This document shows, one piece after another, positions 1 through 19,777 of a stretch of 64,000 bases of DNA. Origin of the DNA: Fonticula alba ATCC 38817 (taxonomy: Eukaryota > Protista > Nucleariida); the NCBI GenBank assembly GCA_000388065.2, contig KB932201.1. One strand, written 5' to 3'. Every line of letters starts with the position of its first letter. Position 1 is the stretch's first letter. The position numbers and the translations under genes were made by a program. The notes under the pieces were generated by a model that did not search any database, had not been told where the DNA came from, and worked only from the letters and a program-made list of their open reading frames with translations.

Positions 1-1407
1 ACCGGGGGCCGGAGTGGGGGGGGGGGGGGGGGGACGAAGGGAACCCCACGCATCCGGGCCGGGGCATTTCCGGGGCCAGGTGGTTCGGCCCACATTTTCA
101 TACGCCTCTCCGGCTCCCCCACCCGGTGTCTGCCCATCCAGAATGCCCGCGGAGGCCGTTGCTTCCCGGAGGTCTGCCGTCCGCACCCCCCCCCCCCCCC
201 CCAAGCGCAGGCCCCGACTTGGCTCTCCACGACCCAAGGCCCAGCCACATGGGAGCGACCCCACCGGCACGCGGGGAGCTGATCACTCCATGTGGTCATA
301 TGATCACACACAACTCCCCACCCCAGGCCCCGATGCAGCACTCCCGCGCGCGCGTTATGCGTCCAGGGCCGCTTCCCGCGCTCTTTGTCCGCGTCTCTCC
401 CTGTCCCGTTCTGTCTCGATGCCTGTGTGTGCGTGTGTCCTCTCTCTCTCCCACTCTCTCTCTCTCTCTCTCTCTCACTCCCTCTCGCTCTCTCTTTCCG
501 AAGGGGAAGCCACGCAGCAGGAGGGGGCGTGTCCAGACCCTGGGAGTCTTGGCGTTTCCGGGCCGGGAGGGGGGGGGGTGAAAAAACAGTGCCGCGCCCA
601 TCCCCGCGGCCTCCACCCTTTTTATGCTCGGGAGTAGTAATAACAAGTCTTGCAGCGCAACTGACGCCTGGAGATCGCGGCGGATCTTCGACCCCCGGGC
701 CCGGGGGCCCTCCTGTCTTCTCTTGCCATTGTTTCTTGCTCACTTGTCTCTCTCCCGCCCCCCCCCCCCCTCGAGATTTCTCGGAGCCCACCCGGGGCGG
801 CTATCTTGAGGGCCAGCGATTGCCCCACCCTCCCTGGTCTTTTTCCTCTTGCCCCCCTCCTGCCACTTTCTCACAAGGCAGGGGATGTTCCGTTGCCGTC
901 ACTAGCCCACATTCAGGCACGTCGGCCAGCCCCACTGTCGTCGCATGCTTATTTGTACGTTATAGTGCCGGGCTTGCCGTTTGGGGGGGGGGGGGGGCAC
1001 AGATTTCCCCCGAGCGCCGAAAGGGGACGCACATGGAGAGCACAGACAGAGGGGAATGATTTTCTTGCTATATTTGGTGCAGTTGCCATGTTGCCAGGCA
1101 GCACGAACGGCCGCGCGCGCCAATGGCCAGTGAGGGGGAGAGGACAAGCCGCAGTATGTGCAACGATCGGAGGAAGCGCGAGCGAGCCAAAGAGAGGGAG
1201 AAAGAAAGACACAAAGAAAGACAGGAGGGGGGGGGGAGGGGAGGGGAGGCGCGGAGAGGGTGGGAGAGGGTGACATAGTGCACTGACACGCCCATACCCC
1301 CGCGTGTCCACACAGGGGGGGCCGATTTCCCGGAGACAATGGGCACCATGAAAGGGCAGGAGGTCAGGGAAGAGGGGAGGAAGGAGAGTGCCCGACACGG
1401 GTGGGGA

Positions 1408-2562
1408 TTACTCGCTGCCCCCGGTGGGGGTGGCGGCGGTGGCCGACATCGACACACCGGCACCAGTCACCGAGTGATGGTGCGGGGCACGCGGCCGAGC
1501 ACCGGGGTGCCGGGGCCCCGGACGCCCGGACGCCATTCCCCCCTGTGGCACGCCGTCCGCCTGGTAGGCCAGGCCATAGGCCGCCTGCGGGGCGAGGGGC
1601 ATTCCCCCGCCGGCCGGGAACCCGGCTCCCGGCATGGTGCCATGATAGGCGTTGCCCTGGGCGCCGCGAGGATGCTGCAGAATGTGCGGCGCCGGGGGGC
1701 GCGGGGCCCCGGCATTGCGAGGCTGCCCGCCGGCGGCGGGGAACTTGCTCAGCGGCCGCTGCTGGCAGGGGACATAGCTGCTGTGCTCGGCACAGTAGAG
1801 GCAAAGGCCGGCCTTGATGCGACGCTCGCGCTCCTCCGCCGACAGGGGGCCACGGTGACGGCGCTGGCCCGATTGCTGCGAAGAGGCGGGCGCCAGGGCA
1901 GCCGGCGACTGGCCGGCCGGCTGCATGGACGGATCCGACACGGCCACCTGGGCGCCGGCCGCCCCGGAGGCCGTCAGCGACACGGCCGTCGGGGCCGACA
2001 TCGGGTCCAGGCCGTTTTGCACGTGGGCCGGCCGCGTCGGACAGGGAGCACTGCTCGGGTGCACGCCGCAGTAGGAGCACAGTCCGGAGGCGGTCCGGCG
2101 GTTGCGCTCCTCCTGAGTGAGGGAATACCGGCCGGTGGTCAGATCCAGGACTCGGCCCATGCGCAGCATCTGCATGCACTGGACATTGTTCGGGTGACCG
2201 CCGCAAATCATGCACAGCCGGTTGAGAGCCCGATCGCGCTGCTGCCGGGCATGGTCCTGCAGCGAGGGGGGCCGGAAGGCCTGAAGTGGAGGGACGCCCC
2301 GGCGAACGAGGCGCATGCAGGGAAGCGTGGCGCTGTGCTTTCCGCAGTACATGCACTGGCCCTTTTGCATGCGGGCGGCGCGCATGTCGTCGGTCAGCGG
2401 CCCGATCGACCCGTCGGCCGAGGGGGAGGACTCATCGTCAGACTGGTCGTCGATGGCCGGGCTGCCAGCCGTCAGGGCGGTCTGGTCGAAGGCCGCGTGG
2501 GGGGAAGAGCCGGCCAGGGGCTCGGTGCCGGCATCGCCGGGGGACTCGAGGTAGGCTTGCAT
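1408..2562 (-). CDS. Intronless 384-aa protein with four CX2CX2HX5C zinc-knuckle modules resembling Ty3/gypsy Gag nucleocapsid; low-complexity Q/G/P/A C-terminus
   Basis: Single ORF with ATG in a GCC-ATG context. Four modules: LTDDMRAARMQKGQCMYCGKHSATLPC, LQDHARQQRDRALNRLCMICGGHPNNVQC, LTQEERNRRTASGLCSYCGVHPSSAPC, LSAEERERRIKAGLCLYCAEHSSYVPC. Codons are C/G-ending, as in the other genes. Confidence 0.8.
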   Translation of the reverse strand: MQAYLESPGDAGTEPLAGSSPHAAFDQTALTAGSPAIDDQSDDESSPSADGSIGPLTDDMRAARMQKGQCMYCGKHSATLPCMRLVRRGVPPLQAFRPPSLQDHARQQRDRALNRLCMICGGHPNNVQCMQMLRMGRVLDLTTGRYSLTQEERNRRTASGLCSYCGVHPSSAPCPTRPAHVQNGLDPMSAPTAVSLTASGAAGAQVAVSDPSMQPAGQSPAALAPASSQQSGQRRHRGPLSAEERERRIKAGLCLYCAEHSSYVPCQQRPLSKFPAAGGQPRNAGAPRPPAPHILQHPRGAQGNAYHGTMPGAGFPAGGGMPLAPQAAYGLAYQADGVPQGGMASGRPGPRHPGARPRAPHHHSVTGAGVSMSATAATPTGGSE

Positions 2563-5500
2563 GGCAGGCGGAAGCAGGGCGGAGGGGGCCGAAGGAGGAG
2601 AAGAGGGGAGGAAAGAGAGGGGAAAAGGAGGAGGATGGAGGGATATGGGGGAGGGGGGGGGGAGGATGGGGATGGGGAGAGGGGGAGGGCGGGTGTGACG
2701 TGCAGGACGTCGTGGGTCTGCGAAGGGGTCACACGCAGAGGAGTGGAGCGGGGAGGGAGGGAAAGGGAAGAGAGAAGGGGAGGTGGAGACCGGGTGTCCC
2801 TGAAGGCCTGTGTCACAGGATGGCCAGGCAGGTGGGTGTCAACCTGAGCCCTCAAAAGCTCGGGGCCCGTGAGCCGGCCAGGGGAATCAACCCTGGGAGG
2901 GGTGTGAGGGTGTGCGTGAGGCGCCGAGACCTGCGGCCCGGCCGAGCGACGTCCCGTAACATGATGTGCGTCGAGCCGACAAGGGGGGGGGGGGGGGGGG
3001 GCGGGGGCGCCGAGGCGGGGCTGGGCCCCAGGCAGCGGGTTGGACCGGAGAGACCCCCTGCACGGACATCGGGCTGTGCACGGCTATGGCGGCGGATCGT
3101 CGGGAGCATCGTCCATCCGGAGGGGGGGCGGGGGGGACAAGAGTGACGCGTCGCTCGGCCGAACTAGGCAAGATGGCGGCCAACTGGCGCCCGCCCGGCA
3201 GTGCCGTGCGCCCCCGCCCAGCGAGAGCGCTTTGGTGTGGGAAATGGTCCGCACCCAGGGTGTATGCCTGTGTGCCAAGGGCTCTCGGCCTGCGACTGGT
3301 TGAACCGCTGGGCTTCCCGCGAAATGAGTGCGCGTGTTTTGGGAGGCCCAGCCATTCACATGCCGCCGGCCTCGGAGACGGGGGCGGCGAGGGCTGTCTC
3401 CTGCCAACCAGGGTGCGGGAGGCCGGGCCGCCCGGGGGTCCTTCGCCCGCCCGTCCCCCCCCCCCCCGGCGAGCCTCTGGGTCGGCAACACCTCTCACTA
3501 ACGGGGAGCCTGGCGCCAACAGCCCGGCGCGGGGGAAGGCCGGGACGGGGGAGATCGGCTCGCCCTTTCGAGGGCCAGAAGCTTGACTGGCCAGCGGGGG
3601 GGGGGGGGCGGGGGGCGGGAGCGAGGCGGGCGTGGTAGATGTCCATACGCCCCGGCCCTGGGGGCGGACGGGTGGTTGAGGTCTGTCTCAAACGTCGGTG
3701 TACGCGGCGCGCGTGCTCGCCTCCGGGCGACCCTTCACTCGGGCGATCCGCCACAGTGCGGCCCGGGTTCCGCCCCCCCCCCCCCGGAGGGCGTGTGTGC
3801 GAGAGAACGGGCCAGCGGGCACTGGGAAAATGATCCGGCGCCCAAGCAAGCTGCCGGGTGTGAGAAAAAAGCCATTCTTCTCCCAGCGCCAGCCAGACAA
3901 AGGACCGACCAAGGGCCGGCGGACGGCTGCAAAGGGGGGGGGGGCCGGACCCGGGGGAAGCGGATCGCGCGGGATCTCTCCCTGGTCCGCCCCCCGGCGG
4001 CATGTGCCGGGCGCCCTGTGGGTCTCCCAGGCGAGGGTGGGACCGGACCGGCCGGACACCCCCGCCCGCCCGCGGCCAGGTCATGTCTTGTGCTGTGCCT
4101 CCGCGGGCCCGGGGGGGGGGGGGGGGCACGCCGTCGGGAGGGCGCCACCCCAGCTCCGCAAGGCCGGCCGCTCTGGAGGCTTGATCTGGGACCAACTGGC
4201 GCAAAGGTCATGGGCCTTTCAGCCCCAGGGCGGCGGGGATCCGCGGTAACGGTTTGCGGGGCACTCGGAGGGTCTTCCTCGCTCCGCTGCCGCCCTCCCC
4301 GAAGGTCCACACCCGGGCCCGGGGTGCTCTAGGGCGCGCGCGCACGCGCGCCCGGCCAGATGGGGCCGGTCCTCGGAAGTATGGGAAGCCCCGGACTCGG
4401 CTGTGGTGGGGAAAACAAATGAATAAAAATACGTGGCAGACAGGAGGACAGCGCCCGTCGCCCTCCGGGGGCAGGCCCTTTCGGCGGGCTTCTCCCCGCG
4501 TGACTCGGCCCCCGGCGCCACCCCCACCCGCTCGGGCCGCTTCCCCGTCCCCTCTCCCAGGCACAGGGGGGAGGGGGGGGGATCCATTGCGCGTGTGGGC
4601 TTCCTTGCGCCATCATGCAAGCCGGCCCCCATGTTGAGGCGCCGACCAGTTTGTTGAGGCGCCGGCCAGCTTGTTGCTTCCGGGTGCGGCTTCCCCGGGG
4701 CCGCAAGCGGGCCGCCTCGGGGGACATTCGCCTTCAGGGACGACCAGGCCCCCTGTCTTTCTCGGCTTCTCTTCCGACGCATCCGCCGTGCTTCCGGGAG
4801 AGGGGGGCCCTCCCCGGGAGCGGGCGTGCACGCGCGCGCGAGCAGACATGCGCACACGCGCTTCCCCGCCAACCGCCTGGTCTGAGGCTGCAGGGGGCAC
4901 TGCCCTTCTTGCCGCCTGCCCCCCCCCCCCCCTCCCCCCCGTTCCACCCTCTGGGGTCGGCTCTGGCAGCCTTCCGGCCTGGGAGACCTTTCCCAGATCT
5001 CCCCCCCCTCCCCACCCCGGTTTCTTCCTTCCAGAGTCTGCGAGCCAGGCCCAAGGGCGCCCAGAATTTCAACGTGCTGGGTGGACCCCCGCCCAACCAA
5101 GAGCGGGGGAGGGGGCGGGGCGGACATGCCCGGGGAGCCGCCCCGAGACGGGAAACGCACAGAGCAGGCCGAGCCAGCAACGGTGATCGGGGCGCATGCA
5201 CCGCGCCCCGCACACATATGGTCACGCGACCTGCGTGGCAACGGCCACGGCCTCTTTCCTCCCCGATCCCTCATCTCCCGGCCGGTGGCGACCAAAATGC
5301 CGCTCTCACCCCTCGGCCCGACGGTCCTGCCCTCGCCCGCGCCATTGGGAGCATCTTCCCCACTTGGCATGACCCTCGCGCCTCCCTGTACCACACACAC
5401 AAACACCCCCGGCGGCAGCGCGACAGGGATAGACAGGCGTGCGCGCACGCGGCCTGCAACACACCAGAGACATGATTGTGCTTATATTTTACATCTCTGT

Positions 5501-5698: not shown

Positions 5699-7510
5699 TC
5701 AGTTATGGCCCCAGAGAGCGGTCTCCGGCGAGGCGCCAGCGCGGGGCTGGCCGCCGACAGCAGTGCGGATGGCCTTGCCCAGGCCACCCAGGTCCAGCGG
5801 CCCGGCCAGCAGGCGCTCCGTGATGGAGGCCAAATCCAGGCCGAGATAGTTCCGGACAAAGAGGCCAACATCGGTGTTCTCGCGGTTGCCGGCCAGATCG
5901 CGCATGATGTCGCGCGCCGTGGCGGCATGGCTGCCACCATACGCATAAAGATTGACATCGGCCGCGGTATGGCCATGCGTGGTCCAGCCAAGCTCCGCAC
6001 GGACGGAGATCACCTCCCCCAGGGCAACCATCATGGCAGCCTGGTTGGCGGCCTGGCCGCCGAGCGCCAGGGTGGTCAGGTTGTCCAGCTCGGCCATGGT
6101 AAGGTCACTGACGCCCTGGTAGTTCTCGATGGTGGTCAGGACATAGGTGCGCATCTCGATCTCCGAGGGCGGGGCATCCGACCCAGACCCAGCGGCATAG
6201 GCAAAGAGGTCGGCCGCCACGAAGAAGGTCGACCGAGACACCCGAGCAATGACCTCCGGGTACCAGATGTACTCCGGATACTCCGGGGTCAGCTGCCGGC
6301 CGCCGGACAGGCCGCCGGTCTCATGGTCGGACACCGAAATGACCACGGTGCCCGGATGCTCATCGACGAACTTCTTCACCATGGCCACCACCTCGTTGTA
6401 CATGATCAGGTCATAGATGTGCGCGGCCGGGTCATTGTCATGGGCGGCATGGTCAATGCGCGAGCCCTCGATCATCAGGAAGAAGGGGGTCCGGTGGTCG
6501 CGCAGCTCTCCACCAAGGACATCCAGCGCGTAGGCGGCCATGTCAGCCAGCGAGGGCTGGTCCGTGGTGGGCCGGTCCACCTCATAAGCCATGTCGCTGG
6601 TGGAGAAGAGCCCGAGCACCGGCAGGGAGCTGGCATCACGCGGGAGAGCCGCCAGCTCGGCCGCCGACTGGACCACCGTGGCGTTGAAGATCTCGGCCGC
6701 CTCGATGCGGAGGTCACGGTCGTCCGTGCGCACGGAGCCGGGCACATCGCGCGGGATGAAGTGACGACGGCCACCACCGAGCACCAGATCGGCCATGAAC
6801 TTGAGCGGGGTCGCGCCGGCGACCTGGTGCTCGGCAATCAGGTTTTCCGAATCGCGATGGGCCACATGCGCCGTGAAGGCGGCCGGAGTGGCGTGCGTCA
6901 CGCGCGAGGTGACCACCACGCCGGTACGATAGCCAAGGACATGGGCCGCCTCGAGCAGGGTGCCACAGGGGCGGATCTCATCGGTGACAGCCACCGCGCC
7001 GTTGTAGGACTTCTGCACGCAGGAGAAGGCCGTGGCACCGGCGGCCGAATCGGTCACCAGCGACGAGGAAGACCGCGTCCGGGAAGACCCAATCAGCATG
7101 GTATCCAGGGGAAGCTGCATGCTGACCGGGGTGGTCGGGTCCGCCTGCGACTGGCGGTACTGGGCGAAGTTCCGGGCCACCGTCATCGAGGTAGGCCCGC
7201 ACCCGTCGGACACCATGAAAATCACCGCCCGCGGGGGGTGGGTGTGGTTCTTGGTCACCAGCACCACGGCCGCCACGATGGACCCGAGCACGGCCGCCAC
7301 CAGGATCGAGGCGAAGGCATAGAACCAGAGGGAGCGGCGCCCGTTGGAGTTGACGCTCATGCTCTCGGCGTCGTCATCGTCATAGGTGCCGACCGGGTGG
7401 CTGGCGATGTCGTGCGTGGCGCCCGAGTCGAAGGAGGAGGTGTTGACCGAGGCATTCCCACCTGACGGGTGGGGCACCTGGTCGGAGCCAAGAAGAGGAC
7501 TATTCTCCAT
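5699..7510 (-). CDS. PHO8: Alkaline phosphatase, Pho8-type type II membrane protein, 603 aa, intronless
   Basis: Motifs SDGCGP, VTDSAAGATAF (catalytic Ser), SRVTHATPAAF, FLMIEGSRIDHAAHDND, SDHETGG, WTTHGHT. N-terminal TM segment FYAFASILVAAVLGSIVAAVVLV. The ATG at 7510 lies just downstream of an N-gap. Confidence 0.95.
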   Translation of the reverse strand: MENSPLLGSDQVPHPSGGNASVNTSSFDSGATHDIASHPVGTYDDDDAESMSVNSNGRRSLWFYAFASILVAAVLGSIVAAVVLVTKNHTHPPRAVIFMVSDGCGPTSMTVARNFAQYRQSQADPTTPVSMQLPLDTMLIGSSRTRSSSSLVTDSAAGATAFSCVQKSYNGAVAVTDEIRPCGTLLEAAHVLGYRTGVVVTSRVTHATPAAFTAHVAHRDSENLIAEHQVAGATPLKFMADLVLGGGRRHFIPRDVPGSVRTDDRDLRIEAAEIFNATVVQSAAELAALPRDASSLPVLGLFSTSDMAYEVDRPTTDQPSLADMAAYALDVLGGELRDHRTPFFLMIEGSRIDHAAHDNDPAAHIYDLIMYNEVVAMVKKFVDEHPGTVVISVSDHETGGLSGGRQLTPEYPEYIWYPEVIARVSRSTFFVAADLFAYAAGSGSDAPPSEIEMRTYVLTTIENYQGVSDLTMAELDNLTTLALGGQAANQAAMMVALGEVISVRAELGWTTHGHTAADVNLYAYGGSHAATARDIMRDLAGNRENTDVGLFVRNYLGLDLASITERLLAGPLDLGGLGKAIRTAVGGQPRAGASPETALWGHN

Positions 7511-7535
7511 GGCCGGGGGGATGGGCGGGCAGGGG

Positions 7536-7994
7536 NNNNNNNNNNNNNNNNNNNNNNNNNNNNNNNNNNNNNNNNNNNNNNNNNNNNNNNNNNNNNNNNN
7601 NNNNNNNNNNNNNNNNNNNNNNNNNNNNNNNNNNNNNNNNNNNNNNNNNNNNNNNNNNNNNNNNNNNNNNNNNNNNNNNNNNNNNNNNNNNNNNNNNNNN
7701 NNNNNNNNNNNNNNNNNNNNNNNNNNNNNNNNNNNNNNNNNNNNNNNNNNNNNNNNNNNNNNNNNNNNNNNNNNNNNNNNNNNNNNNNNNNNNNNNNNNN
7801 NNNNNNNNNNNNNNNNNNNNNNNNNNNNNNNNNNNNNNNNNNNNNNNNNNNNNNNNNNNNNNNNNNNNNNNNNNNNNNNNNNNNNNNNNNNNNNNNNNNN
7901 NNNNNNNNNNNNNNNNNNNNNNNNNNNNNNNNNNNNNNNNNNNNNNNNNNNNNNNNNNNNNNNNNNNNNNNNNNNNNNNNNNNNNNNNNNNNNN
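7536..7994. other. Assembly gap (N run)
   Basis: N run immediately upstream of the alkaline phosphatase ATG. Confidence 1.
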
Positions 7995-9437
7995 AGGCTG
8001 GCAGAGAAGCGGCCAAGGCGCGGGCCCGGTGTGGAGGTGCGGGTGCGAGGACGGGGGGCGGAGAGGTACCTTGCCAAGGCCAGGAGGGGAGGGGAGGAGA
8101 GAGGGGAGGAGGGCAGGGAGGGGGGAACGACCCAAGGAGAGAAGGGAAAGGGGGAGGGGGGGAGGAATCGTTGCCGGGGGCTGGAGGCGAGGCGCTCCAG
8201 CCCGTCACCGGAGTGGCTGATCAGGGGGGAGGCGGGGGAGGCATGCACTGGCGCGCATCGGTCAGCGGTGGCCTGGGGGCGTGAGGGCCGGGGGGCACAA
8301 AATTCGGCCGATGCGCCGGGGCAGAGGGCCGCAGCGGGCAGATGGGTGTGCGCCTGTGTGCCTGCGTGCCTGTGTGCCTGTGTGCCTGTGGTTGTCGGCC
8401 GCGGTCATGGCCCCGTCTCGGGGTTCCGGTCCGGGCCGGGAGGAGGCTGTGCGCGGGAATTACGAAGCAGTCGCCATGCAGGCCTGGCGGGCGCACAACG
8501 GCGGGACGGGCTGCCGACGGCGCGCCCCCCGCCTGCCGCGGCGGGGCCGGGAGCAAGTCGCCCGAACCCGCGCCCCGATCCCCGGGATTTCGGCTATGGT
8601 ATCAGGCCACATTACGATAGGGCGCCGGGTCCTGTGGCCCCGGCCTACAGGGCGGGGGGGGGGCGCCTCGTGGCATGCAGGCCGATGTCCGGAAGATCCG
8701 GGCGGAGCTGCTGGTTCCCCTCCAATATGGTTGCAACGGCCACCCCCCCCCCCCCCCCCCCCACACAGGCCGCGGTCTATGGCCTCCTCCTGCACGAGGC
8801 CCAGGCGGCCGAAAGAGGAGGAGCCCCGGGGGGGAGAGAGGGGGAAGGGCGAAGGGGCGAAAGAGTCGCTCCTCCCCAGACCAACAGCACTGCCTACACA
8901 GAGAGGGCAATAACAATGTCCCAGTCCAGGGCCACTCTCAGCTGGGGCCATGCCCCGGGGATGCCACGCTTGGGTCACCCCCCCCCCCCCCCCTGCCGGG
9001 GTGGGGCGGGTCTCTCTTTGTCCCGCCCCGGCGACCTAAGTGCGGGCTGGGGCGACTTCTTGTCCCCAGCGAACGGGCCTCCGGGCCGGGGTGCCACAGC
9101 GGAAAATATAGTGGCACGTGTGTCACTCTCCACGTGTGGGATATGAGTTAACCCGATCTCCCAGCCTCGCCGCGCTTATCTGTCACAGTTACCCTCGCGA
9201 GCTGGCAAACGGCCAGTCGTGAGGGCAGGCATCGTTGGCTCAGGGGCTTGAGCCGTTGGCGTGCAGGGGGCGCGTATGTGCGTGCATTCTCCCTGCGCCC
9301 ATGCTGGCCGCAGGTGCACGCATGTGCGCTTCCCGGCCGGACCTTTACTTGCTTCCCTGGACCACGCCCCCTCTCCCTCTTCGTAAGTTGCCGGCCTGTT
9401 GTTGGCCATCTCCGTGGGAGGCCTTTGTGTCAAGCCG

Positions 9438-10325: not shown

Positions 10326-12735
10326 CTAGATGACATTCTCCTGGCCGCTGTCGTCGCTGTCGTTGTCAGACGACAGGTCCAAGGGCTCGGCCCCGGAGGG
10401 GGGAGCAGCAGCATCGCTGTCCCCGGCCCCGGAGGGGCTGGCCACGGAGCGTGGCGAGGAGGGTGCCGCGGCCGCGGCCGCCGCCGTCACCTCAGGGGTG
10501 GTGGTGACCACCATCGGCGGCTCGGAGACCACCACGGTGGTGGCAGCTGGGGGAACGGTGGTCGGGGCGGCATGCGGCTGCTGGTCGGCGGCCGAGAGAG
10601 ACTGGACATCGGAGCCGGCCAGCGAGGCGATGCTCTGGGCCCCGATAGAAGCACGCCCTGCCATCTGGTAGGTGCTGTCCACGGGCGACATGGCCGTCAG
10701 GCAGGGGGAGGGCATGGCCGAGGAGATGGAGCCGGTGGCCACGGCACCCGGCAAGTGGGACATGCTCATGTTCGGAGAGGTGGCCTCGGATTCATTCTCG
10801 GCCATGGACTCCAGCTCGTATTCGGTGGTCGTGCTGTAGGTGGCGTACGAGGGGGTAATCTCGTGCATGGAGATGGACTTCTCCAGGTCGCGGTCCTTGC
10901 CATTGGCGCGGTTCTTGCGGTCCTGCTTGCGAGAAGAGCGCGACGCGCCGGTCGAGCCGCGACCGCCACTGGACGAGTCGAAGGCGAACTCGAAGTGCGC
11001 GGCAAAGCGAACGAGGTACTCCTCGCGGTTGAAGATGCTGCGCGCATGAGAGCAAGGCGAGGGGGGGGGGGGGGAGGGAGGGACAGTCAGCAAGGGGTGC
11101 ACATGATGGGGCGCCACCACCACCGGGGGGGGGGAGGGAGAAAGCAGTCACATCCGGGGGCGCGGCAAAGGGCGACCAAAGGAGCGTGAGGCAGGGAGGG
11201 GCCCGGACGTACTGGTGGTAGAGCGGGATGCCGACAATCGGCCAGTAGAAAATCATCACCGAGGCCCAGGGGAGGACAATGCCCCAGTAGCCCCCGGGCA
11301 TGGTGTGATACCGGTGCGAGGAGATGGCAATGTAGGAGGCGAAGAGCACGGCGAAGATGCTCAGCTGGAAGAGCGTGCGCCGGTACTCGTTGAAGTGCTT
11401 GGGCGGGAGCTTGCGATTGATGAACATCAGCCCGGCCAGGCCGAGGAAGCTCCAAATGAACACGGTCAAGTTGATCCACACATGGAAGGGCTTGACATTG
11501 ATGCAGACCAGGGTCTTGATTGAGCCGGCCTGTAATTTTAAGGGACAGGGGGGCGAAAGGGGGAGACGAGAGGAGGACGGTAAGCAGCAGGTTGAGAGGA
11601 GGGGAAGATGGCAAAATGCGAGGGGGTGACACGCACCACCGGGAACAGGCGAATCATGTTCATGGAGGTGAGGATGATGGCATCAATCAGGTGGGGCAGG
11701 TAGAAGAGGAAGGTCACGCCGTAGAGGGTCCAGAAGGTCATCTTGATCTTCTTGAAAATGAGGAACAGGCGCCACATGCGGAAGAAGAACATGGCCAGGA
11801 ACAGCCCCAGGCCGAAGGGGACCATGAGCCAGTCTGGAAATGGTCCACATGTGCCGGGGAGGAGAGCGGCGGCAGGGGGGGGGGGGGGGATGGAAAGCAC
11901 GCGCGAGTCACCGGGGTCAGAGGGGTGGGTGCAGGCAGGCGGCGACAAAAAGGAACGAGCATGTGGCGCGTCCTCAAGCGGCATAGGACGCACAGTAGAA
12001 AATGCACCACCAGGGCCAGAAGCAGGGGATGAACTTGTAGACAGTCTGAGCAGGCGTGTGTGTGCGTGTGTGTATGTGTGTGTGTGTGTACGAGCGAGTG
12101 TAAAGTGCCAGGCGGACGGGTCAGTATCAGGGGAGAGGGCGCACCAGGGCGGTGGCAGAGGTGGGCAGGTGGGAGGGCCAGCAGCGAAAGGCGAGGGCAC
12201 AGGAGCAACGCACGCAAACGCCAACAAAGAAGTTGATACCGCCTGGGGGAGGCCGCGGGAGGAAGGTCGAGCCATGCGTGTCAAGGTGTGAAGGTGGCGC
12301 AGTCAGCAGGGGGAAGGCGCCGGAGGAAGATGCAGCAGGGGGTCGGCCCGGGCTCAGAGCCGATGAAGGGGCAGGGTGGGAGGAAAGGAAGAAGAAAAAG
12401 GCACAGGGAGACGTACCGATGATCATGCCGCCGACGACGGCCGGCTGGCGTGCCTTGAAGGGAAGCCAGTTCCGGTTGAACCAGATGTACACGAAGGAGA
12501 CGAAGGACAGAATGAGGGTAAAGAAACCGATGGACCCGAGGATGGTCTTGCCGAGGACCTGGCCCAGCTCGACGGCCAGGTCAACCGACGGGTCGGTCCA
12601 GCCAAGCTGCCCCTGGGGGGTGATGTAAAGCTGGTACTTGGGCGAGCCGGCGGCGGAGATGTTGTCGGCGGCACTCTGCGAGATGCTGGCGAACAGCTCC
12701 GGCAGGGTGGCGATGACGGGGGTTAACCCGGACAT
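10326..12735 (-). CDS. Seven-transmembrane receptor, class C (7tm_3)-like, short N-terminus, long Ser/Thr-rich C-tail; 6 exons
   Basis: Exons 12735-12417, 12242-12214, 12045-11994, 11833-11637, 11529-11213, 11037-10326 join in frame via GT-AG. Seven hydrophobic helices; class C-like motifs RNWLPFKARQP (ICL1), FFRMWRLFLIF (end of TM3) and PKHFNEYR (ICL3); Cys at the top of TM3 and in ECL2. Confidence 0.8.
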
Positions 12736-19508: not shown

Positions 19509-19777
19509 ACACTTTTCTCGCACGACCGCCGACGAGATCCCCGCCTTTCACCGCACCAGGGTCTCCCCCCCCCTTCCGGCCTGCTCATGACCCAGTCGGG
19601 GCTTCCCTTGATCGGCAGTTGTGTATTGTTACAGGGGGGTGTCTTTCTTTCTCTCTTCCCCCTTCTCTGGTGCTTTGTCTTCTCGCCACCCAGCTTCCAC
19701 CCTTACGCTCTCCCCCACAAGGGGGCACGCGTCCGTGTGAGTGTGGCTGGACAGGCGTGGCAGAGCAGGAAAGGCCG

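What the first reader, a model, noticed from the sequence alone, without database searches (positions are those of the whole stretch)
1765..2397. Stand-alone protein built from four Gag-nucleocapsid-like zinc knuckles with novel CX2CX2HX5C spacing
Seen: four modules, each an L(T/S)xxxRxxR-type helix followed by C-x2-C-x2-H-x5-C with identical spacing (knuckles at 2355-2317, 2214-2176, 2079-2041, 1803-1765). The gene is intronless, has an acidic N-terminus and a Q/G/P/A/Y-rich low-complexity tail. I saw no capsid, protease, RT, integrase or LTR nearby. Known: 'LxxEE(R/K)xRRxxxxLCLYCG' leading into a CX2CX4HX4C knuckle is typical of Ty3/gypsy Gag and domesticated Gag such as PEG10. Inference: a retrotransposon nucleocapsid module was captured, its His spacing re-tuned and the module multiplied into a host multivalent RNA-binding protein. 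It could act in RNA granules or as a decoy/restriction factor against retroelements.
Basis: partly seen in the sequence, partly recalled or inferred. Interest (0 to 1): 0.75.

Follow-up and report, generated by a model that had tools for sequence, protein, structure and literature searches.

The report
Gag-knuckle-derived zinc protein family in Fonticula
An unannotated gene of the slime-mould-like amoeba Fonticula alba encodes four copies of a helix-plus-zinc-knuckle unit that matches the RNA-binding tail of retrotransposon Gag proteins. It has two larger sister genes in the same genome, so it looks like a small host gene family made from a retrotransposon part.

Summary
The 384-aa intronless ORF at window 1408-2562 (-) carries four C-x2-C-x2-H-x5-C motifs at exactly the stated coordinates. 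Each follows a basic helix. No such motif occurs elsewhere in the six frames of the 64 kb (chance expectation 0.15).

The window is Fonticula alba scaffold KB932201.1.

- **Gag link supported:** a profile of the four modules, run against 1.84 billion proteins, returned 132 hits. Most are Ty3/gypsy Gag proteins.
- **Stand-alone supported:** no capsid, pol or LTR lies nearby.
- **Spacing is not new to this gene:** genuine chromovirus-type Gag proteins carry the same spacing. Three of them lie beside protease, RT or integrase genes. The spacing was therefore probably inherited, not re-tuned after capture.
- **Not an orphan:** Fonticula has two paralogues, H696_05279 (10 knuckles) and H696_02790 (about 8), both among ordinary host genes.

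All 20 Fonticula modules keep the four ligands, although identity elsewhere is 17%. This argues for function.

Pfam, PDB sequence search and Foldseek do not recognise the module. Zinc binding and nucleic-acid binding are inferred, not shown.

One caveat on homology: the helix-plus-CxxCG half also matches bacterial C4 zinc ribbons.

Verdict: a new variant of a known kind, of moderate interest.

The parts
1408..2562 (-). Complete intronless CDS (384 aa plus stop) = P0001, a hypothetical protein of Fonticula alba scaffold KB932201.1
   Evidence: ORF list. NCBI gene call identical to the ORF. GC3 0.85 in this frame.
2383..2562 (-). Acidic N-terminal region, residues 1-60 (12 D/E, 0 K/R, pI 4.05)
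2293..2427 (-). Module 1: pre-knuckle helix, CCHC knuckle (2317-2355) and start of the post-knuckle helix
2152..2286 (-). Module 2: helix plus knuckle (2176-2214), 47 residues after module 1
2017..2151 (-). Module 3: helix plus knuckle (2041-2079), 45 residues after module 2. It is 54% identical over 35 aa to the nucleocapsid of retroelement Gag P0054.
1858..2040 (-). A/S/P/Q-rich linker between modules 3 and 4 (residues 175-235), predicted disordered
1741..1875 (-). Module 4: helix plus knuckle (1765-1803), the most Gag-like module. AF2 with the module alignment gives pLDDT 80.
1411..1752 (-). G/A/P-rich basic low-complexity tail (residues 271-384, pI 11.3)

Best explanation
The gene is one of three Fonticula alba paralogues: this 384-aa protein, H696_05279 (932 aa) and H696_02790 (1213 aa). 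All are built from tandem 43-47-residue units. Each unit is a basic amphipathic helix, then a 13-residue Cys-Cys-His-Cys loop (C-x2-C-x2-H-x5-C), then often a short second helix.

The unit most likely descends from the capsid-nucleocapsid junction of a chromovirus-type Ty3/gypsy Gag that already had this unusual spacing. It lost its capsid and pol context, was amplified, and the resulting array gene then duplicated.

Inferred mechanism:
- Each loop chelates one Zn2+ through its three Cys and one His.
- The basic helices and the largely conserved aromatic residue between the first two Cys contact single-stranded nucleic acid, as in retroelement nucleocapsids.
- Four such units in a basic array (pI about 10) give multivalent, chaperone-like RNA or ssDNA binding.
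- The acidic N-terminus and the G/A/P-rich tail act as disordered modulators.

Shown: motif, repeat architecture, ligand conservation, paralogy, similarity to Gag nucleocapsids of the same spacing, and absence of capsid, pol and LTR.

Inferred: zinc binding, nucleic-acid binding, direction of transfer, cellular role.
For: - The motif occurs four times at the exact coordinates, against a chance expectation of 0.15.
- The profile of the four modules gives 132 hits at E<=1e-3 among 1.84 billion proteins. Of 131 hits scanned, 45 have Retrotrans_gag, 38 Ty3_capsid and 26 DUF4939, all in parts not used as query.
- The two best single-module hits, P0008 (45.9 bits) and P0010 (45.0 bits), both have the identical C2C2H5C spacing and match across all four ligands.
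- P0008 lies upstream of protease and RT/RNaseH genes.
- P0054 lies beside a PR-RT-RH-IN-chromodomain Pol.
- P0056 lies just upstream of RVP, RT_RNaseH and integrase fragments.
- P0021 and P0111 carry Retrotrans_gag.
- In the reverse direction, Gag queries hit only the modules, and only with their nucleocapsid part. P0054 versus module 3 is 54% identical over 35 aa.
- A profile built only from the 20 Fonticula modules still scores C2C2H5C Gag nucleocapsids at 33-39 bits in one stretch.
- Host-gene status: the two paralogues sit on other scaffolds among ribosomal, DnaJ/PPR, WD40 and ABC-transporter genes, and one has an intron.
- P0001 is colinear with P0004 residues 777-989 (32% identity, E 1e-21) and also matches P0002 (E 5e-18).
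- The ligands are invariant in 20/20 modules, while identity elsewhere is 17%.
- Each protein is the sole member of its 90% identity cluster, so there are no near-identical copies among called proteins.
Against: - Pfam zf-CCHC and all other Pfam zinc-knuckle models fail to hit, even at E<=10.
- There is no PDB sequence relative and no Foldseek match, so the fold is not independently tied to retroviral knuckles.
- The helix-plus-GLCxxCG half of the profile also hits bacterial HNH-linked C4 zinc-ribbon repeats (P0007, P0009, P0012, P0014). That half is therefore generic, and homology rests on roughly 35-residue matches.
- No Fonticula retroelement with this knuckle was seen, though the genome itself could not be searched.
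- No orthologue outside Fonticula was found, so selection could not be measured.
- No expression, zinc-binding or RNA-binding data are available.
Confidence: 0.6

Rival explanations
1. This is a cellular zinc-binding repeat that resembles Gag nucleocapsid only by convergence. A basic helix running into CxxCG is a common way to start a zinc knuckle or ribbon, so the family arose independently in the Fonticula lineage.
For: - The same profile retrieves bacterial C4 zinc-ribbon repeat proteins with a very similar 'R..GLC.YCGKH' start at E 1e-5 to 1e-7.
- Pfam zf-CCHC does not match.
- There is no structural match.
- The modules are short.
Against: - The bacterial hits match only the first half and reach significance by summing several weak stretches. 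They are C4 ribbons with 8-12-residue loops.
- Gag hits with C2C2H5C match in a single stretch across all four ligands with identical spacing. They also share the [PS]-L-[ST]-x-E-E helix cap and G-x-H-[PS].
- The top two single-module hits out of 1.84 billion proteins are such Gag-type proteins.
Confidence: 0.17
2. This is a decaying remnant of a retrotransposon gag gene, called as a gene by annotation, with no host function.
For: - The only database relatives outside Fonticula are retroelement Gag proteins.
- The protein is annotated only as hypothetical.
- The tail is low-complexity.
- No expression data were available.
Against: - The 384-codon ORF is intact, with a sustained coding GC3 signature.
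- All four ligands are intact in 20/20 modules across three paralogues that are otherwise 17% identical.
- There is no capsid, pol or LTR trace.
- The paralogues lie among host genes and one carries an intron.
- There are no near-identical copies.
Confidence: 0.07
3. One reading: the family acts as a decoy or restriction factor, competing with retroelement Gag for element RNA or poisoning particle assembly.
For: - The modules are most similar to the nucleocapsids of a specific chromovirus group.
- From the literature, Gag-derived restriction factors such as Fv1 exist in mammals, as summarised in PMC10516033.
Against: - Nothing here bears on it directly.
- No matching retroelement was seen in the Fonticula sequence available.
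- Known Gag-derived restriction factors use capsid, not nucleocapsid.
- Two paralogues have Arg-rich, acid-poor N-termini that look more like organelle-targeting presequences.
Confidence: 0.06
4. The transfer ran in the opposite direction: an old cellular helix-knuckle module was captured by a chromovirus lineage, replacing its canonical knuckle.
For: - The C2C2H5C variant is rare among Gag hits: 6 clusters out of roughly 100 Gag-like hits.
- Those clusters could be a single derived retroelement lineage.
Against: - Gag proteins show a graded series of spacings: C2C4H4C, C2C3H4C, C2C2H5C, C2C2H6C and a C2C2H7C form. All follow the same pre-knuckle helix, which fits variation arising within Gag.
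- The cellular family is confined to one species in a collection of 15 billion proteins.
Confidence: 0.05

Closest known systems
Nucleocapsid (C-terminal Gag) region of chromovirus-type Ty3/gypsy LTR retrotransposons with a variant C-x2-C-x2-H-x5-C knuckle (P0008/L005, P0054/L004, P0056/L006, P0021, P0111, P0010)
   Same: The ligand spacing is identical. They share a basic helix with a [PS]-L-[ST]-x-E-E cap and an Arg six residues before the first Cys. They also share Leu before Cys1, Tyr between Cys1 and Cys2, and G-x-H-[PS]. Identity reaches 54% over 35 aa.
   Different: In the retroelements the module is single, follows a capsid domain and precedes or adjoins protease-RT-RNaseH-integrase. 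Here there is no capsid or pol, the module is repeated four times (10 and about 8 times in the paralogues), and the genes sit among host genes.
Canonical retroviral-type zinc knuckle, Pfam zf-CCHC PF00098 (C-x2-C-x4-H-x4-C)
   Same: Same ligand set (Cys, Cys, His, Cys), a very short loop, Gly after the second Cys and a basic context.
   Different: There are two fewer residues between Cys2 and His and one more between His and Cys3. The Pfam model does not detect the module at E<=10. No solved structure has this spacing by sequence search.
Domesticated metaviral Gag genes of mammals (PEG10, RTL/SIRH, PNMA, ARC)
   Same: Host genes derived from Ty3/gypsy gag. Some keep the nucleocapsid and bind RNA (PMC10516033). 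Many hits of the module profile carry the DUF4939 or PEG10-type capsid domains.
   Different: Those genes are defined by a retained capsid domain. This family has none. Only the helix-knuckle unit was kept, and it was amplified.
Cellular multi-knuckle nucleic-acid binders (CNBP/Gis2, trypanosomatid HEXBP/UMSBP, Air1/2); comparison from general knowledge
   Same: Tandem arrays of 4-10 CCHC knuckles in a basic protein, working as multivalent single-strand RNA/DNA binders or chaperones. This is the best functional analogy.
   Different: Those proteins use canonical spacing with short linkers and are recognised by Pfam zf-CCHC. Here the period is about 45 residues with helices between knuckles, and Pfam does not match.
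Bacterial/phage HNH-associated repeated C4 zinc ribbons (Pfam DZR_2/DZR; P0007, P0009, P0012, P0014)
   Same: A repeated basic helix running into G-L-C-x-x-C-G-K-(H).
   Different: The second half is C-x2-C after an 8-12-residue loop (four Cys ligands), and some of these proteins end in an HNH motif. Matches cover only the first half of the module.

Membership tests
Pfam zf-CCHC (PF00098) retroviral-type zinc knuckle | Score above the gathering threshold of the family model | tested here: not met
   No hit at E<=10 for the whole protein, the 225-aa array or any single module.
Pfam zf-CCHC (PF00098) retroviral-type zinc knuckle | C-x2-C-x4-H-x4-C spacing | tested here: not met
   All four motifs are C-x2-C-x2-H-x5-C. 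There is no canonical motif in the window.
Ty3/gypsy (Metaviridae) Gag nucleocapsid | A CCHC knuckle preceded by a basic helix, with significant sequence similarity to the nucleocapsid regions of bona fide Gag proteins | tested here: met
   The module profile gives 132 hits at E<=1e-3 in 1.84 billion proteins, 45 of them with Retrotrans_gag and 38 with Ty3_capsid. Identical spacing occurs in Gag proteins that lie beside pol genes. The reverse tblastn hits only the modules. Caveat: the first half of the profile is generic.
Ty3/gypsy (Metaviridae) Gag nucleocapsid | Located downstream of a capsid domain in the same protein | tested here: not met
   No Retrotrans_gag, Ty3_capsid or DUF4939 in P0001, P0002 or P0004. 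The capsid parts of seven Gag queries find nothing.
Ty3/gypsy (Metaviridae) Gag nucleocapsid | Part of an element with protease, RT, RNaseH, integrase and LTRs | tested here: not met
   No pol hit at E<1 in the window or in L001-L003. No long direct repeats within 10 kb on either side. The neighbours are cellular genes.
Domesticated Gag genes (PEG10/RTL/PNMA/ARC type) | Retained capsid (Retrotrans_gag / PEG10_N-capsid / PNMA) domain | tested here: not met
Zinc-binding knuckle fold (any CCHC) | Tetrahedral coordination of one Zn by three Cys and one His; a knuckle-like fold | tested here: inconclusive
   The ligands are invariant in 20/20 modules. The AF2 module model has pLDDT 80, with a helix plus a small hairpin. 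Coordinates could not be inspected. Foldseek gives no PDB match and no significant BFVD match. Zinc binding needs an experiment.
Double zinc ribbon (Pfam DZR/DZR_2) repeats | C-x2-C ... C-x2-C four-Cys ribbons scoring on the Pfam models | tested here: not met
   No DZR hit for P0001. Each module has only three Cys.
Mobile element (multi-copy) | Many near-identical genomic copies | tested here: inconclusive
   P0001, P0002 and P0004 are each the only member of their 90% clusters and occur on one contig each. The whole Fonticula assembly could not be searched at the DNA level.

The most novel reading that the evidence does not exclude
Fonticula alba has domesticated only the nucleocapsid helix-knuckle unit of a chromovirus Gag, with no capsid. 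It amplified the unit into arrays of 4 to 10 and spread them over three genes that serve as a lineage-specific class of multivalent RNA chaperones. Two of these may be organellar. One may act against the very retroelements the unit came from. This would be a nucleocapsid-only Gag domestication outside animals, built on a zinc knuckle of a spacing class with no solved structure.
Probability: 0.3. Interest if true: 0.6.

Novelty: new variant of a known kind. Interest (0 to 1): 0.42.

Why it matters
Known Gag domestications (PEG10, RTL, PNMA, ARC, Fv1) centre on the capsid. A host family that kept only the nucleocapsid unit and multiplied it would show a different route from retroelement to host RNA-binding protein. 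It would do so in a unicellular relative of fungi.

The C-x2-C-x2-H-x5-C knuckle is missed by Pfam and has no solved structure. A full-text search for four spellings of the spacing found no paper. It nevertheless occurs in real chromovirus Gag proteins from soil and marine samples. A profile for it would improve Gag and nucleocapsid annotation. A structure would show how a CCHC knuckle tolerates a shifted His.

Tried and rejected
- **Word-index protein search:** run on the whole protein and on residues 48-275. It found only the protein itself. The length window and the low-complexity tail limit this search. The exhaustive profile search was then justified, because the claim rested on absence of relatives.
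- **Pfam:** run on the whole protein, the array and single modules. It gave only a sub-threshold DUF5679 match (best E 0.004, 17.7 bits against a cut-off of 27), rejected as noise.
- **PDB sequence searches:** run with two profiles and the array. They gave only E about 0.3-1.6 matches (HNH endonuclease, GATA-1, CbbY, MID49, uL24), rejected as chance.
- **Foldseek of the module model:** zero PDB matches. The best BFVD match had E 1.4. The module is too small for this method.
- **Single-sequence AF2 of the array:** pLDDT 50, used only for helix positions.
- **Word search with Gag P0054, to name the host of the C2C2H5C elements:** it found one unnamed relative. A paper search for the run accessions found nothing. 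The hosts of these elements remain unknown, apart from the sample types (Tara Oceans and soil metagenomes).
- **Literature:** no paper gives this spacing. There is nothing on Fonticula retroelements.
- **LTR search around the gene:** only CT/GA and poly-C low-complexity repeats.
- **Considered and rejected:** the overlapping long ORFs 1339-2847 (+) and 1364-2356 (-). Their GC3 is lower than their GC1, as expected of non-coding frames in GC-rich DNA.
- **hhalign of Fonticula modules against Gag nucleocapsid segments:** not run. Those segments had been selected by the same profile, so the test would be circular.
- **Operators' rules:** the window is not human, so no human contig was handled. P0002 has an intron.

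Full report
**Where the window comes from.** The 384-aa protein occurs once in the protein collection, on a 4.77-Mb record: NCBI GCA_000388065.2, scaffold KB932201.1. A preprint names this accession as the Fonticula alba genome. The two paralogues found later are named 'hypothetical protein H696_... [Fonticula alba]'. Fonticula is a cellular slime mould on the fungal side of Opisthokonta. The window is GC-rich (about 0.63-0.77 where there are no gaps) and holds eight runs of N. It is not human sequence.

**The observation.**
All four are in one frame of the minus strand, inside ORF 1408-2562.
- There is no other match in the window and no canonical C-x2-C-x4-H-x4-C. From six-frame residue frequencies, 0.15 matches per window are expected by chance.
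- All 12 cysteines of the protein are in these motifs.
- The frame has the coding signature of a GC-rich genome: GC3 0.85 > GC1 0.72 > GC2 0.61 along the whole ORF. The overlapping long ORFs lack it.
- The NCBI gene model equals the ORF, so the gene is intronless.
- The four modules align without gaps, sharing an Arg six residues before the first Cys.
- Residues 1-60 are acidic (pI 4.05), the array is basic (pI about 10), and the tail is G/A/P-rich.

**Surroundings.**
- The called neighbours are an alkaline phosphatase, an AMP-binding enzyme, a TFIIB-domain protein and unannotated genes.
- Within 10 kb on either side there are only CT/GA and poly-C low-complexity repeats, nothing LTR-like.
- tblastn used a complete chromovirus Pol and seven Gag proteins against the window and the three Fonticula loci. 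There was no capsid or pol match at E<1. The only hits were the nucleocapsid parts of the Gag queries landing on the modules.

**Relatives.**
- Pfam finds no zinc-knuckle family, even at E<=10.
- The word-index search finds only the protein itself.
- Because the claim rested on absence of relatives, I ran the exhaustive HMMER search with a profile of the four modules (alignment A1). It gave 132 proteins at E<=1e-3 among 1.84 billion.
- Two hits are Fonticula paralogues on other scaffolds. P0002 (H696_05279, 932 aa) has ten C2C2H5C motifs. P0004 (H696_02790, 1213 aa) has six, plus one C2C2H6C and one canonical C2C4H4C motif.
- Module spacing in all three proteins is mostly 43-47 residues.
- P0001 is colinear with P0004 residues 777-989 (32% identity, E 1e-21). 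It also aligns with P0002 (E 5e-18). The array therefore predates the gene duplications.
- The paralogues lie among ribosomal protein, DnaJ/PPR, WD40 and ABC-transporter genes. P0002 has an intron.

**The link to Gag.**
- Of 131 hits scanned with Pfam, 45 carry Retrotrans_gag, 38 Ty3_capsid, 26 DUF4939 and 24 zf-CCHC. These domains were not part of the query.
- Most hits have the canonical knuckle and match profile positions 4-28, that is, the helix plus CxxCG.
P0008 and P0010 are the two best single-module hits in the whole library.
- P0008 is followed by protease and RT/RNaseH genes.
- P0054 lies beside a 1241-aa Pol with protease, RT, RNaseH, integrase, SH3 and chromodomain.
- P0056 lies just upstream of RVP, RT_RNaseH and integrase fragments.
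- P0021 and P0111 carry capsid domains.
- Related variants also occur: C2C3H4C, C2C2H6C, and a C2C2H7C form in a complete chromovirus, L007.
- P0006 is a Gag with three helix-plus-knuckle units.
- So the spacing is a natural variant within chromovirus-type Gag, and module multiplication happens within Gag too. 'Novel spacing, re-tuned after capture' is not.
- Named canonical hits come from basidiomycetes. The C2C2H5C elements come from unnamed eukaryotes in metagenome, Tara Oceans and read-archive assemblies.

**A caveat on homology.**
- The same profile also retrieves bacterial proteins made of repeated C4 zinc ribbons, some ending in an HNH motif. Their repeats begin 'R..GLC.YCGKH'.
- They reach significance by summing several half-length matches, and their ligand geometry is different.
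- They show that 'basic helix into CxxCG' is a generic start.
- The case for descent from Gag therefore rests on the full-length, same-spacing matches of about 35 residues. These score 33-46 bits, and P0054 versus module 3 is 54% identical. It also rests on the shared helix cap and G-x-H-[PS].
- I put the Gag origin at about 0.75 and convergence at about 0.17.

**Is it a working gene?**
- Across the 20 Fonticula modules, the four ligand columns are invariant. Pairwise identity elsewhere averages 17%.
- Arg six residues before Cys1 is kept in 17/20 modules, Leu before Cys1 in 14/20, Gly after Cys2 in 16/20 and Pro after His in 14/20.
- This pattern is that of a constrained metal site, not of a decaying relic.
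- There are no near-identical copies among called proteins.
- Expression could not be checked.

**Structure.**
- AF2 on one module with a 23-row alignment gives pLDDT 80, about 90 in the core. The model has a ten-residue helix followed by a small hairpin over the knuckle.
- The single-sequence model of the array has low confidence. It places helices before each knuckle and after knuckles 1 and 2.
- Foldseek finds nothing in PDB and nothing significant in BFVD.
- PDB sequence searches are empty.
- No solved structure represents this spacing class.

**How it most likely works.**
- By analogy with retroelement nucleocapsids, which bind and package RNA (PMC10516033), each unit should hold one zinc ion.
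- With its basic helix and the aromatic residue between the first two Cys, each unit should bind single-stranded nucleic acid.
- By analogy with cellular multi-knuckle proteins (general knowledge), four units in a basic array would give multivalent, chaperone-like binding.
- The acidic head and the G/A/P-rich tail are probably disordered.
- This mechanism is inferred, not shown. The decoy or restriction idea remains possible but has no support here.

**Verdict.** This is a lineage-specific, unannotated family of multi-knuckle proteins. It is most likely a nucleocapsid-only derivative of a chromovirus Gag with a variant CCHC spacing. It is a new variant of a known kind, of moderate interest.

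Noticed in passing
L002:8001-10966 (P0002) and L003:8001-11642 (P0004): The two long paralogues begin with Arg-rich, almost acid-free N-termini. In the first 60 residues P0002 has 0 D/E and P0004 has 2. These look like organelle-targeting presequences. The window's protein starts with an acidic stretch instead. No targeting predictor was available.
   Followed up: no
P0003 (XP_026205824.1, Anabas testudineus; not in the window): A 1027-aa fish protein consists of 12 near-identical repeats of roughly 85 aa. Eleven carry an intact canonical C-x2-C-x4-H-x4-C knuckle behind a Gag-type helix. It is either an independent tandem amplification of a nucleocapsid fragment or an annotation of a satellite.
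   Followed up: partly
P0007, P0009, P0012, P0014, P0031 (not in the window): Bacterial-type proteins are built of 3-5 repeated C4 zinc ribbons, each introduced by a basic helix and 'GLC.YCGKH'. P0012 carries a C-terminal HNH-like motif. Six hits score on Pfam DZR_2. The start of their repeats is strikingly like the Gag/Fonticula module.
   Followed up: partly
window 5699-8248 (-): The alkaline phosphatase gene (Pfam Alk_phosphatase in the called product) is interrupted in the assembly by a 459-base run of N at 7536-7994. Seven further N runs lie in the window.
   Followed up: no
window 440-495; L001 about 12050-12140 and 19660-19750, and many other intergenic sites: Intergenic DNA is full of CT/GA dinucleotide runs, GCAC repeats and poly-C tracts of 12-20 bases. 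The stretch upstream of the gene's ATG (about 2565-2790) is almost pure pyrimidine on the coding strand.
   Followed up: no
L004:3-5058: On this 5.3-kb read-archive contig the Pol ORF (3-3728) lies upstream of the Gag ORF (4111-5058) on the same strand. This is the reverse of the usual order. It suggests tandem elements or a circularly permuted assembly.
   Followed up: no
L007:1270-6641: A complete chromovirus from a soil metagenome has a 449-aa gag and a 1239-aa pol with RT, RNaseH, integrase, SH3 and a weak chromodomain hit. Its Gag knuckle has yet another spacing, C-x2-C-x2-H-x7-C. The identical Gag is found in three independent assemblies.
   Followed up: partly
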